A stretch of DNA of 64,000 bases, taken from contig NC_043005.1 of the NCBI RefSeq assembly GCF_006345805.1, positions 18,290,001-18,354,000 of the forward strand. Reading direction: 5' to 3'. Within the stretch, counting starts at the first letter, position 1; each line of letters starts with the position of its first letter. The DNA is from Octopus sinensis (taxonomy: Eukaryota). A model generated the notes under the pieces. The model saw only the letters and a program-made list of their open reading frames with translations. It did not search any database and was not told the origin of the DNA. Of this stretch, positions 39,006 to 42,016 are shown one piece after another. The position numbers and the translations under genes are program-made.

Positions 39006-39294
39006 TATTATATATATATATATATATAGCAATTAAGGACAACTACTTAATAAGGAAAACTTAACAAGAAATTGTCAGGTAGATAGCGTAAAAACCTCAT
39101 AAGAGAAAAAATTTCGAAAATAATTATTTCTTATTGAACATATTAATTTATATATAGAGGGCATTATACATACATGCCAGGAGGCATTCTACATACACGC
39201 CATACGCTAAGAGGGACAATCAGTCATTTCTACCAAAAATATTACTAATCCCACCGAATGCAATTTTTCAAAGAAAGACATTTAAAAATATATA

Positions 39295-39340
39295 GACCTG
39301 TATCACAGTGATTTCATACTTACGTAATCATCAGCAGGCC
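39295..39340 (-). ncRNA. Type I hammerhead, array copy 1
   Basis: GGCCTG-CTGATGA-T-TAC-GTAA-GTA-T-GAAA-TCA-CTG-TGA-TA-CAGGTC. Confidence 0.78.
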
Positions 39341-39774
39341 TGAATATACCATAAATAAACAACGACCCCGCTTCGCTTAAGCCGATCAGCTAACTGATCA
39401 ACATCAACGAAGCACATGGTTGAATTTATATATACTATATCCGGATGAATGGCAAACTTTTACGAATTGCATTTCGGGAGAGGAAAAGTTTTTTCGGAAT
39501 AAAAATTTAGCAATTAAGGACAACTACTTAATAAGGAAAACTTAACAAGAAATTGTCAGGTAGATAGCGTAAAAACCTCATAAGAGAAAAAATTTCGAAA
39601 ATAATTATTTCTTATTGAACATATTAATTTATATATAGAGGGCATTATACATACATGCCAGGAGGCATTCTACATACACGCCATACGCTAAGAGGGACAA
39701 TCAGTCATTTCTACAAAAATATTACTAATCCCACCGAATGCAATTTTTCAAAGAAAGACATTTAAAAATATATA

Positions 39775-39820
39775 GACCTGTATCACAGTGATTTCATACT
39801 TACGTAATCATCAGCAGGCC
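39775..39820 (-). ncRNA. Type I hammerhead, array copy 2
   Basis: Identical to copy 1. Confidence 0.78.
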
Positions 39821-40252
39821 TGAATATACCATAAATAAACAACGACCCCGCTTCGCTTAAGCCGATCAGCTAACTGATCAACATCAACGAAGCACATGGT
39901 TGAATTTATATACTATATCCGGATGAATGGCAAACTTTTACGAATTGCATTTCGGGAGAGGAAAAGTTTTTTCGGAATAAAAATTTAGCAATTAAGGACA
40001 ACTACTTAATAAGGAAAACTTAACAAGAATTGTCAGGTAGATAGCGTAAAAACCTCATAAGAGAAAAAATTTCGAAAATAATTATTTCTTATTGAACATA
40101 TTAATTTATATATAGAGGGCATTATACATACATGCCAGGAGGCATTCTACATACACGCCATACGCTAAGAGGGACAATCAGTCATTTCTACCAAAAATAT
40201 TACTAATCCCACCGAATGCAATTTTTCAAAGAAAGACATTTAAAAATATATA

Positions 40253-40298
40253 GACCTGTATCACAATGATTTCATACTTACGTAATCATCAGCAGGCC
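40253..40298 (-). ncRNA. Type I hammerhead, array copy 3
   Basis: One change, in the stem III loop (CTG to TTG). Confidence 0.75.
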
Positions 40299-40733
40299 TG
40301 AATATACCATAAATAAACAACGACCCCGCTTCGCTTAAGCCGATCAGCTAACTGATCAACATCAACTAAGCACATGGTTGAATTTATATATACTATATCC
40401 GGATGAATGGCAAACTTTTACGAATTGCATTTCGGGAGAGGAAAAGTTTTTTCGGAATAAAAATTTAGCAATTAAGGACAACTACTTAATAAGGAAAACT
40501 TAACAAGAAATTGTCAGGTAGATAGCGTAAAAACCTCATAAGAGAAAAAATTTCGAAAATAATTATTTCTTATTGAACATATTAATTTATATATAGAGGG
40601 CATTATACATACATGCCAGGAGGCATTCTACATACACGCCATACGCTAAGAGGGACAATCAGTCATTTCTACCAAAAATATTACTAATCCCACCGAATGC
40701 AATTTTTCAAAGAAAGACATTTAAAAATATATA

Positions 40734-40779
40734 GACCTGTATCACAGTGATTTCATACTTACGTAATCATCAGCAGGCC
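40734..40779 (-). ncRNA. Type I hammerhead, array copy 4
   Basis: Identical to copy 1. Confidence 0.78.
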
Positions 40780-40824
40780 TGAATATAAGCGAAGCGGGGT
40801 CGTTGTTTATTTATGGTATATTCA

Positions 40825-40870
40825 GGCCTGCTGATGATTACGTAAGTATGAAATCACTGTGATACAGGTC
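40825..40870 (+). ncRNA. Type I hammerhead, array copy 5
   Basis: Same motif on the plus strand; predicted cut 40864/40865. Confidence 0.78.
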
Positions 40871-41305
40871 TATATATTTTAAAATGTCTTTCTTTGAAAA
40901 ATTGCATTCGGTGGGATTAGTAATATTTTTGGTAGAAATGACTGATTGTCCCTCTTAGCGTATGGCGTGTATGTAGAATGCCTCCTGGCATGTATGTATA
41001 ATGCCCTCTATATATAAATTAATATGTTCAATAAGAAATAATTATTTTCGAAATTTTTTCTCTTATGAGGTTTTTACGCTATCTACCTGACAATTTCTTG
41101 TTAAGTTTTCCTTATTAAGTAGTTGTCCTTAATTGCTAAATTTTTATTCCGAAAAAACTTTTCCTCTCCCGAAATGCAATTCGTAAAAGTTTGCCATTCA
41201 TCCGGATATAGTATATATAAATTCAACCATGTGCTTCGTTGATGTTGATCAGTTAGCTGATCGGCTTAAGCGAAGCGGGGTCGTTGTTTATTTATGGTAT
41301 ATTCA

Positions 41306-41351
41306 GGCCTGCTGATGATTACGTAAGTATGAAATCACTGTGATACAGGTC
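41306..41351 (+). ncRNA. Type I hammerhead, array copy 6
   Basis: Predicted cut 41345/41346. Confidence 0.78.
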
Positions 41352-41786
41352 TATATATTTTTAAATGTCTTTCTTTGAAAAATTGCATTCGGTGGGATTA
41401 GTAATATTTTTGGTAGAAATGACTGATTGTCCCTCTTAGCGTATGGCGTGTATGTAGAATGCCTCCTGGCATGTATGTATAATGCCCTCTATATATAAAT
41501 TAATATGTTCAATAAGAAATAATTATTTTCGAAATTTTTTCTCTTATGAGGTTTTTACGCTATCTACCTGACAATTTCTTGTTAAGTTTTCCTTATTAAG
41601 TAGTTGTCCTTAATTGCTAAATTTTTATTCCGAAAAAACTTTTCCTCTCCCGAAATGCAATTCGTAAAAGTTTGCCATTCATCCGGATATAGTATATATA
41701 AATTCAACCATGTGCTTCGTTGATGTTGATCAGTTAGCTGATCGGCTTAAGCGAAGCGGGGTCGTTGTTTATTTATGGTATATTCA

Positions 41787-41832
41787 GGCCTGCTGATGAT
41801 TACGTAAGTATGAAATCACTGTGATACAGGTC
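41787..41832 (+). ncRNA. Type I hammerhead, array copy 7
   Basis: Predicted cut 41826/41827. Confidence 0.78.
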
Positions 41833-41970
41833 TATATATTTTTAAATGTCTTTCTTTGAAAAATTGCATTCGGTGGGATTAGTAATATTTTTGGTAGAAA
41901 TGACTGATTGTCCCTCTTAGCGTATGGCGTGTATGTAGAATGCCTCCTGGCATGTATGTATAATGCCCTC

Positions 41971-42016
<46 letters not shown>

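What the first reader, a model, noticed from the sequence alone, without database searches (positions are those of the whole stretch)
39028..41981. Array of ~480-bp units, each carrying a type I hammerhead ribozyme (retrozyme-like)
Seen: 3.7 direct units followed by ~2.5 inverted units, near-identical, with no long ORF and (TA)n on both flanks. Every unit contains GGCCUG-CUGAUGA-U-UAC-GUAA-GUA-U-GAAA-UCA-CUG-UGA-UA-CAGGUC. That is a full catalytic core, a 6-7 bp stem I, a GNRA-capped stem II and a near-palindromic stem III (AUCAC-U-GUGAU). Known: Penelope-like retroelements and metazoan retrozymes are tandem non-coding repeats with minimal type I hammerheads, which often cleave as dimers and yield circular RNAs. 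Inferred: a transcript would be cut into ~480-nt monomers (plus-strand cuts 40864, 41345, 41826, spaced 481 nt) that could circularise and be mobilised by a PLE reverse transcriptase. The U.U at 10.1/11.1 is non-canonical. I cannot tell whether this family has been described before.
Basis: partly seen in the sequence, partly recalled or inferred. Interest (0 to 1): 0.95.

Follow-up and report, generated by a model that had tools for sequence, protein, structure and literature searches.

The report
Hammerhead retrozyme array, Penelope-style insertion
This 3-kb block is one insertion of a small non-coding jumping element whose 481-base repeats each carry a self-cutting hammerhead RNA motif. It is a new family of the already known animal "retrozymes", and its insertion scars match those of Penelope-like retrotransposons.

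Summary
Window 39027-41981 is two head-to-head arrays of a 481-bp unit: 3.7 units with their sense on the minus strand and 2.5 with their sense on the plus strand. The units are 99% alike, lie in (TA)n and hold no ORF of 70 aa or more. All seven units carry a complete type I hammerhead motif.

The family has about 2,100-2,300 motif copies at several hundred loci of this 2.7-Gb genome. Three subfamilies differ in the ribozyme only at position 10.1 (U, A or G).

Every two-armed locus examined has the same layout:
- The sense strands diverge from the centre (35 of 35 loci).
- The inner junctions vary from locus to locus.
- One outer end falls at unit position about 156 and the other at about 275 (9 of 9 complete insertions).
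- The flanks are (TA)n.

This tandem/inverted, one-sided-"tail", (TA)n-targeted layout is the one described for Penelope-like elements. Intact Penelope-like ORFs inserted in (TA)n exist in the genome.

Contigs of one probable RNA run show a strongly skewed A>G and T>C pattern. That indicates transcription of both strands and ADAR editing of double-stranded RNA.

Self-cleavage and RNA circles are untested. Rfam does not score the motif above threshold, and the window's subfamily has a U.U at 10.1/11.1.

Verdict: a new member of a known kind (metazoan non-LTR retrozyme). This scan has already noted similar octopus retrozyme families elsewhere in this genome.

The parts
39027..40787 (-). Left arm: 3.7 units of the 481-bp repeat, with sense (ribozyme) on the minus strand. 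Its outer (3') end is of the 'beta' type, ...CCTTAATTGCTA, joined to (TA)n at about 39029. Its inner (5') end is truncated at unit position 435.
40786..41981 (+). Right arm: 2.5 units with sense on the plus strand. Its inner 5' end is at unit position 404, sharing 2 nt (TA) with the left arm. Its outer 3' end is of the 'alpha' type, ...CCCTCTATATATAAAT, joined to (AT)n at about 41971.
39295..39340 (-). Hammerhead motif, copy 1 of the left arm
   Evidence: exact match
39775..39820 (-). Hammerhead motif, copy 2 of the left arm
   Evidence: exact match
40253..40298 (-). Hammerhead motif, copy 3 of the left arm, with C>U in loop III (a G.U pair in the dimer form)
   Evidence: 1 mismatch
40734..40779 (-). 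Hammerhead motif, copy 4 of the left arm
   Evidence: exact match
40825..40870 (+). Hammerhead motif, copy 1 of the right arm; predicted cut after A40864
41306..41351 (+). Hammerhead motif, copy 2 of the right arm. C3-A9 = 41312-41318; U10.1 = 41319; stem II 41320-41322/41327-41329 with a GUAA loop; U11.1 = 41330; G12-A14 = 41331-41333; stem III 41334-41337/41341-41344; A17 = 41345 with the cut after it; stem I 41305-41311/41346-41352.
41787..41832 (+). Hammerhead motif, copy 3 of the right arm; predicted cut after A41826
39005..39028 (.). (TA)n target microsatellite, left flank
41971..42027 (.). (TA)n target microsatellite, right flank

Best explanation
This is one insertion of a young, non-autonomous, non-coding retroelement of the metazoan 'non-LTR retrozyme' kind.

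Proposed mechanism. Steps 1 and 2 are inferred from published retrozyme biology, and step 3 from the DNA layout here; the layout itself is shown.
1. Sense transcripts that run outward through an arm are multimers of the 481-nt unit.
2. The type I hammerhead in each unit cuts after A17. It probably acts as a dimer, because its stem III is a near-palindrome. The cut releases 481-nt monomers, which a host RNA ligase can circularise.
3. A Penelope-like element (PLE) RT/GIY-YIG enzyme nicks a (TA)n microsatellite. It primes cDNA synthesis at two fixed TA-rich sites of the RNA, alpha at about position 156 and beta at about 275. It copies the circular or multimeric template for one to many turns from both nicks, and the two cDNAs are joined head to head.

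Read-through transcripts of such an inverted pair fold into long double-stranded RNA, which ADAR edits.
For: Motif:
- All conserved core nucleotides are present: C3 U4 G5 A6 G8 A9 G12 A13 A14, A15.1-U16.1 and H17 = A.
- The helices are a 7-bp stem I, a GUAA-capped stem II and a 4-bp stem III. In a dimer, stem III becomes a 10-bp helix.
- The dimer cofold MFE is the hammerhead fold, -28.3 kcal/mol against 2 x -10.3 for two monomers.
- The motif occurs 2,260 times in the genome with up to 2 mismatches; the reversed control gives 0.

Constraint:
- Three subfamilies are 89-96% identical overall. In the ribozyme they differ only at 10.1 (U, A, G), sporadically at 11.1, and at one loop III nucleotide.
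- The core and stems are unchanged: 2 of 432 other cells changed, against about 6% in the rest of the unit.
- Variants seen in other runs improve pairs: U10.1>G, U1.5>C opposite G.
- The sense RNA folds with z = -6.1, the antisense with z = -3.7.

Mobility and PLE signature:
- At least 312 units that are 98-100% identical lie on many chromosomes.
- In 35 of 35 two-orientation clusters the minus copies lie left of the plus copies.
- In 9 of 9 complete insertions one outer end is alpha and the other beta, both in (TA)n.
- Inner junctions differ at every locus, with 0-2 nt microhomology or 2-13 nt filler.
- Both arms of an insertion share the same marker haplotype in 10 of 12 arrays, although several haplotypes circulate.
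- Published PLE insertions show the same tandem/inverted structure, a tail at one end only and (TA)n targets (PMC8557442). Opposite-strand hammerhead pairs near PLEs are reported in PMC4209133.
- The genome holds thousands of GIY-YIG candidates (147 of the 150 scored matched). One intact 781-aa RT plus C-terminal GIY-YIG element lies between (TA)n tracts.

Transcription: contigs of run X7 show A>G at 8 places and T>C at 6, against G>A at 1 and C>T at 0. One loose end has every A of the ribozyme segment read as G.
Against: - No Rfam hammerhead model reaches its gathering score. The best is HH9 at 13.8 bits against 52, E = 0.3 on 67 nt.
- The window's subfamily has U.U at 10.1/11.1, where G-C is highly conserved (PMC4209133). 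Stem II then has only three pairs.
- The hammerhead fold is not the MFE of the isolated monomer (-8.3 against -10.3 kcal/mol).
- Counted as independent events, the lower divergence of the ribozyme has little statistical power.
- The run types were guessed, and only contigs were available. No 5'/3' ends at the cut site and no proof of circles could be obtained.
- The one intact PLE examined has no hammerhead and no similarity to the unit. No ribozyme copy was seen within 5 kb of a listed GIY-YIG hit on contig C1.
Confidence: 0.78

Rival explanations
1. The ribozyme motif is a relic. The family is still copied by PLE-type machinery, but from uncleaved multimeric transcripts, so the hammerhead no longer cuts and no RNA circle is involved.
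For: The most prolific subfamily has the non-canonical U.U at 10.1/11.1 and a 3-bp stem II. Rfam scores are far below threshold. The outer ends of insertions never coincide with the cut site. Homogeneous donor arrays could by themselves give homogeneous daughter arrays. Published PLE minimal hammerheads cleave poorly in vitro (PMC4209133).
Against: The core and stems stay intact across three subfamilies that differ by 4-11% elsewhere. About 2,100 exact 27-mer cores exist. Arms of 12-15 units in a young family are hard to regenerate from 5'-truncating linear templates. The dimer fold is strongly favoured.
Confidence: 0.15
2. It is a foldback-type DNA element or an ordinary satellite: inverted arms built of tandem subrepeats that spread at the DNA level, with a hammerhead-like string present by chance.
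For: Inverted arms made of tandem repeats with almost no spacer resemble foldback elements. No target-site duplication can be read in (TA)n.
Against: The two outer ends are different sequences (alpha and beta), not terminal inverted repeats. The inner junctions differ at each locus. The units are dispersed at hundreds of loci, always in (TA)n. The chance expectation for a full hammerhead motif in a 481-nt unit is negligible, and the reversed-pattern control gives 0. The layout matches published PLE insertions.
Confidence: 0.03
3. The palindromic array is an assembly artefact, for example chimeric long reads.
For: A near-perfect 760-nt palindrome with a 29-nt spacer is the kind of structure that assemblers can create.
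Against: The same architecture recurs at 35 listed loci, each with different inner junctions. Runs of about nine organism labels from at least 11 studies hold the unit.
Confidence: 0.01

Closest known systems
Metazoan non-LTR retrozymes (Cervera & de la Pena 2020, PMC7229834; Li et al. 2026 preprint, 10.64898/2026.07.22.740005)
   Same: [quoted passage not shown] There is a type I hammerhead in each unit and a highly self-paired RNA. Copies are dispersed across the genome, and dependence on PLE enzymes is proposed.
   Different: The unit (481 bp) is longer than the published 150-450 bp range. The host is a cephalopod-type genome, for which I found no description in the paper library. 10.1/11.1 is U.U, A-U or G.U rather than G-C. 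The obligatory head-to-head twin arms with two fixed 3' ends are not mentioned in either paper. Circles and cleavage are not shown here.
Minimal hammerheads of Penelope-like elements (Cervera & de la Pena 2014, PMC4209133)
   Same: A type I motif with a small palindromic helix III that is predicted to work as a dimer. Motif pairs occur on opposite strands a few hundred bp apart. It is associated with PLE-type insertions.
   Different: Here helix II is short (3 bp plus GUAA), not the long 6-8 bp helix. There is no unpaired nucleotide only on the 5' side of stem II, no G10.1-C11.1 pair and no linked RT ORF.
EN+ Penelope-like element insertions (Neptune/Naiad-type structure; Craig et al. 2021, PMC8557442)
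   Same: Partial tandems with an inverted 5'-truncated copy at the 5' side, an extension ('tail') at only one end, and a (TA)n target preference.
   Different: There is no ORF. The 'tail' is about 120 bp (unit positions 157-275) instead of 30-40 bp. Both arms are multimers.
L1 twin priming
   Same: Both nicked target strands prime cDNA synthesis, which gives an inverted junction with microhomology.
   Different: In L1 the second primer anneals internally on a linear RNA, and only one end carries the 3' terminus. Here both flanks abut 3' termini, and the template behaves as endless.

Membership tests
Hammerhead ribozyme, type I (Rfam clan CL00010) | Conserved core: C3 U4 G5 A6 N7 G8 A9, G12 A13 A14, A15.1-U16.1, H17 | tested here: met
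   CUGAUGA ... GAAA ... U-A, with the cut after A, in all 7 copies. About 2,100 exact cores genome-wide.
Hammerhead ribozyme, type I (Rfam clan CL00010) | Three helices around the core, with helix I open | tested here: met
   Stem I is 7 bp, stem II is 3 bp plus a GUAA loop, and stem III is 4 bp with a 3-nt loop (10 bp in the dimer). The structure energy is -8.3 kcal/mol, and the dimer MFE adopts the hammerhead fold.
Hammerhead ribozyme, type I (Rfam clan CL00010) | G10.1-C11.1 base pair | tested here: not met
   U.U in this window. Sister subfamilies have A-U or G.U, and a single genomic copy has G-C.
Hammerhead ribozyme, type I (Rfam clan CL00010) | Score at or above an Rfam gathering threshold | tested here: not met
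   No hit at gathering threshold. The best is Hammerhead_HH9 at 13.8 bits against 52. RF00163 does find other, canonical hammerheads in this genome.
Hammerhead ribozyme, type I (Rfam clan CL00010) | Site-specific self-cleavage | not testable with these tools
   Only contigs were available, so no molecule ends could be read.
Metazoan non-LTR retrozyme | Short non-coding tandem repeat (about 150-450 bp) of low GC, with a type I hammerhead in every unit | tested here: met
   481-bp unit (slightly above the published range), GC 0.32-0.33, no ORF of 70 aa or more, 7 of 7 units with the motif.
Metazoan non-LTR retrozyme | Dispersed, multi-copy, recently mobile | tested here: met
   At least 312 units at 98-100% identity on many contigs, with a different inner junction at each locus.
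Metazoan non-LTR retrozyme | Expressed as linear and circular RNA of unit length | tested here: inconclusive
   Contigs of probable RNA runs hold the unit and show an A>G/T>C editing signature. The 481-nt 'goes back' joint fits a tandem array as well as a circle.
Metazoan non-LTR retrozyme | Highly self-paired monomer RNA | tested here: met
   MFE -127 kcal/mol, z = -6.1 against shuffles.
Element inserted by Penelope-like RT/GIY-YIG machinery | Tandem plus inverted 5'-truncated copies, a one-sided tail, and a microsatellite (TA)n target | tested here: met
   35 of 35 clusters divergent, 9 of 9 insertions with alpha plus beta ends, and (TA)n flanks. Compared with PMC8557442.
Element inserted by Penelope-like RT/GIY-YIG machinery | Autonomous partner present in the genome and sharing terminal sequence with the unit | tested here: inconclusive
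   Intact RT plus GIY-YIG ORFs are present and lie in (TA)n. The one copy examined shares no sequence or hammerhead with the unit. Both end in ...TAAAT before (AT)n.

The most novel reading that the evidence does not exclude
Each insertion is made in a single event by twin-primed, rolling-circle reverse transcription of one 481-nt RNA circle. Priming occurs at two fixed sites, alpha on one nicked strand and beta on the other. That would give a concrete, testable model of the still undefined PLE integration reaction. The perfect hairpins so created are then transcribed into double-stranded RNA that ADAR hyper-edits, including the ribozyme core. Host editing would thus disable the element's own ribozyme.
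Probability: 0.3. Interest if true: 0.6.

Novelty: new member of a known kind. Interest (0 to 1): 0.4.

Why it matters
Retrozymes and their dependence on Penelope-like elements are known, so the class is not new. This family adds three things:
- It is a cephalopod-type example with roughly two thousand very young copies.
- It is a natural series at ribozyme position 10.1 (U.U, A-U, G.U) in which the mismatch variant is the most prolific. That makes it possible to test how much self-cleavage such elements need.
- Its insertion architecture is unusually regular: divergent arms, and one alpha plus one beta end at every complete locus. This constrains models of the poorly understood PLE integration step.

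The head-to-head arrays are also a ready source of long double-stranded RNA in an animal known for heavy RNA editing.

Tried and rejected
- Rfam at gathering threshold on the whole window, and at E up to 10 on 3.2 kb, gave no hammerhead hit. Only a 67-nt search gave HH9 at 13.8 bits.
- I looked for an autonomous partner. GIY-YIG hits on contig C1 do not lie within 5 kb of listed ribozyme copies. The intact PLE in L047 has no similarity to the unit and no hammerhead.
- A lone 'cousin' hammerhead with a G-C stem II at C3658:3961 (L048) is single-copy and unrelated outside stem III, so it was not used as evidence.
- An apparent cDNA run-off exactly at the cut site in L041 was a BLAST break; the 16-nt 'filler' is ribozyme sequence.
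- The extended stem I (7 further AU/GU pairs) predicted by the MFE is not conserved between subfamilies, so it was dropped.
- Snap-back copying of one arm from the other was considered. Private variants are not mirrored between arms and the outer ends differ, so twin priming is preferred, though snap-back is not excluded.
- Per-position variation among 83 young copies is about 2.4 times lower in the ribozyme. The cells are not independent, so this is weak evidence.
- ARAGORN finds no tRNA in 36000-45000.
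Full report
**Observation**

The region is as described.
- Tandem Repeats Finder reports a 481-bp period with 3.7 copies at 39027-40787 and 2.5 copies at 40786-41981, each 99% matched.
- The two blocks are inverted. 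The innermost 760 nt of the arms are about 100% complementary, with 29 nt between them.
- (TA)n flanks both sides.
- No ORF of 70 aa or more overlaps the array, and GC is 0.32-0.33.
- The 46-nt hammerhead string occurs seven times, 4 on the minus strand and 3 on the plus strand. Six copies are exact and one has a C>U in loop III; shuffles give none.

**The ribozyme motif**

Numbering the middle plus-strand copy:
- Stem I is 41305-41311 paired with 41346-41352 (7 bp, one G.U).
- C3-A9 = 41312-41318 (CUGAUGA).
- U10.1 = 41319 and U11.1 = 41330.
- Stem II is UAC/GUA with a GUAA loop.
- G12-A14 = 41331-41333.
- Stem III is AUCA/UGAU with a CUG loop (41334-41344).
- A17 = 41345, with the predicted cut after it.

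All conserved core positions are present; the 10.1/11.1 pair is U.U.

In isolation the hammerhead fold costs -8.3 kcal/mol against an MFE of -10.3 kcal/mol. When two copies are cofolded, the MFE is the hammerhead fold with a 10-bp intermolecular stem III, at -28.3 kcal/mol. This fits the dimer mode published for animal and PLE hammerheads (PMC4209133; PMC7229834).

Rfam does not recognise the motif. There is nothing at gathering score, nothing at E up to 10 on 3.2 kb, and only Hammerhead_HH9 at 13.8 bits against a threshold of 52 on a 67-nt search. RF00163 does find canonical hammerheads elsewhere in the same genome (best 48.2 bits), including a tandem pair 431 nt apart. The genome therefore hosts other ribozyme repeats.

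**Genome-wide picture**

The window is C9:18290001-18354000 of a 2.72-Gb assembly.
- A single unit finds at least 312 matches at 98-100% identity on many contigs.
- The ribozyme pattern occurs 2,260 times with up to 2 mismatches, and 0 times in the reversed control.
- Exact 27-mer cores number 1,918 with U, A or C at 10.1. In the first 100 listed, 67 have U, 33 have A and none has C.
- A further 189 exact cores have G at 10.1.

G-type arrays are 89-96% identical to the window's unit, and an A-type array is about 92% identical.

Across these subfamilies the ribozyme differs only at 10.1, sporadically at 11.1, and at the middle loop III nucleotide.
- Excluding 10.1, 2 of 432 ribozyme cells differ, against about 6% elsewhere in the unit.
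- A10.1-U11.1 is a Watson-Crick pair and G10.1.U11.1 is a wobble pair. The window's U.U subfamily is the youngest and largest.
- Counted as independent events, the depletion has little statistical power. The placement of the changes in tolerant positions is what a constrained ribozyme would show.
- An extended stem I suggested by the MFE is not conserved.
- The sense monomer RNA is strongly structured (z = -6.1), more so than the antisense (z = -3.7).

**Insertion architecture**

This is the strongest new evidence.

I mapped units in 13 loci.
- Each two-armed locus has the ribozyme-sense strands diverging from the centre.
- In the place lists, all 35 clusters that hold both orientations have the minus copies to the left of the plus copies.
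- The inner (5') ends fall at different unit positions at every locus. They are joined with 0-2 nt of overlap or 2-13 nt of filler, so these are independent events and not duplications.
- The outer (3') ends are of only two kinds. Alpha is ...CCCTCTATATATAAAT (unit position about 156). Beta is ...CCTTAATTGCTA(AAT) (unit position about 275-278). Both abut (TA)n.
- All nine complete insertions have one alpha and one beta end. Neither end coincides with the ribozyme cut site.
- Marker haplotypes that differ between loci are uniform within an insertion, both arms included, in 10 of 12 arrays.

Published PLE insertions are partial tandems with an inverted 5'-truncated copy at the 5' side. They have an extension present at one end only and a preference for (TA)n (PMC8557442). 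This family reproduces all three features, with a longer 'tail' of about 120 bp.

**Candidate enzymes**

The genome holds thousands of GIY-YIG candidates; 147 of the 150 that were scored matched the family, many inside long open frames. [quoted passage not shown] It lies in a 3.9-kb element bounded by (TA)n on both sides. That copy has no hammerhead and no similarity to the unit, so the partner is not identified.

**Mechanism (inferred)**

- The templates are endless (circular) or multimeric RNAs of a single sequence variant.
- Both nicked strands of a (TA)n target prime cDNA synthesis, one at alpha and one at beta.
- The cDNAs stop at variable points and are joined head to head.
- Arms of 12-15 units in a young family favour rolling-circle copying of a monomer circle. 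That in turn would need the ribozyme and a ligase, as published for retrozymes (PMC7229834).
- Multimeric uncleaved transcripts cannot be excluded.

**RNA evidence**

About nine organism labels from at least 11 studies hold near-identical sequence, but no run is on record as RNA.

I laid contigs of four probable RNA runs on one permuted unit.
- Run X7 gave 82 contigs, many below 95% identity, whose differences are A>G at 8 places and T>C at 6, against G>A at 1 and C>T at 0.
- One loose end has every A of GAUUACGUAAGUAUGAAA read as G, and another shows dense T>C changes.
- Genomic divergence would give symmetric transitions, as in run X19. This is therefore best read as ADAR hyper-editing of double-stranded RNA made from both strands, which the inverted arms would form.
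- Contigs cannot show molecule ends, and the 481-nt 'goes back' joint fits tandem DNA as well as circles. Cleavage and circularity therefore remain untested.
- Variants in other runs (U10.1>G in X19; U1.5>C opposite G in X9) keep or improve pairing.

**Comparison and novelty**

The element matches the published definition of metazoan non-LTR retrozymes (PMC7229834) and the proposal that these are non-autonomous PLE derivatives (preprint 10.64898/2026.07.22.740005).

I found no paper in the library that describes retrozymes in an octopus or other cephalopod. Neither retrozyme paper mentions the head-to-head architecture with two fixed ends.

Earlier notes of this scan already describe several hammerhead repeat families of 349-505 bp in this same genome as octopus retrozymes with Penelope-style insertion, some as inverted twin arrays in (TA)n. 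They agree with my reading but are not independent evidence. That the host is an octopus rests on those notes and on my recollection of the flanking tRNA-derived SINE; I did not test it.

**Verdict**

This is a real, young retrozyme-type element and a new member of a known kind. Its ribozyme activity is untested. Interest is moderate, and lies mainly in the regular insertion architecture, the natural 10.1 series and the editing signature.

Noticed in passing
window 42029-42185: A repeat of about 155 bp (ggcgaaggagtggctgtg...gaagcccgtcgta) lies between two (TA)n tracts, right after the array. From memory it resembles the abundant tRNA-derived SINE of octopus genomes. ARAGORN calls no tRNA there.
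   Followed up: partly
window 7530-8603 (-) and 26252-27598 (-): ORFs of 357 and 448 aa with Pfam RVT_1 (52.5 and 65.6 bits) and no GIY-YIG hit. They are probably LINE-type fragments, lie 11 kb or more from the array, and are not linked to it.
   Followed up: partly
G000:C16:25146363-25146408 and 25146794-25146839 (L036/L037); G000:C13:29988995 (L031): Canonical Hammerhead_1 hits above the Rfam threshold elsewhere in the genome. They include a tandem pair 431 nt apart and a 48.2-bit copy with the CUGAAGAG...CGAAACAUGU core. These are other ribozyme-bearing repeat families.
   Followed up: no
L047 1332-5220 (G000:C3:65733831-65737719): A full-length EN+ Penelope-like element with an intact 781-aa ORF (RVT_1 plus C-terminal GIY-YIG). 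It has five repeats of about 51 nt in the 3' region, is bounded by (TA)n on both sides, ends in ...CTTAATATAAAT, and has no hammerhead. Many GIY-YIG hits with identical scores suggest a young high-copy family.
   Followed up: partly
L046 1572-3272 (G000:C1:37668571-37670271): A foreign segment of about 1.7 kb interrupts the minus arm of a G10.1-subfamily array. About 22 nt of the unit (positions 378-400) are present on both sides, so it looks like a nested insertion with a long target duplication.
   Followed up: no
G000:C1:143653222-143658987: A 12-unit array shows a higher-order pattern of two marker haplotypes (3+2+3+4 units). This suggests internal duplication or a mixed template, unlike the uniform arrays elsewhere.
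   Followed up: no
run X7 laid on window 41100-41580: A strongly skewed pattern of A>G and T>C differences and hyper-edited loose ends, including all As of the ribozyme core segment. This is the signature of ADAR editing of double-stranded RNA from this repeat.
   Followed up: partly
L048 1562-1598 (G000:C3658:3961-3997, -): A single-copy hammerhead-like string has the same stem III (AUCACUGUGAU) but a different stem II closed by G10.1-C11.1 (GCAUU...AAUGC). It shows no other similarity to the unit.
   Followed up: partly
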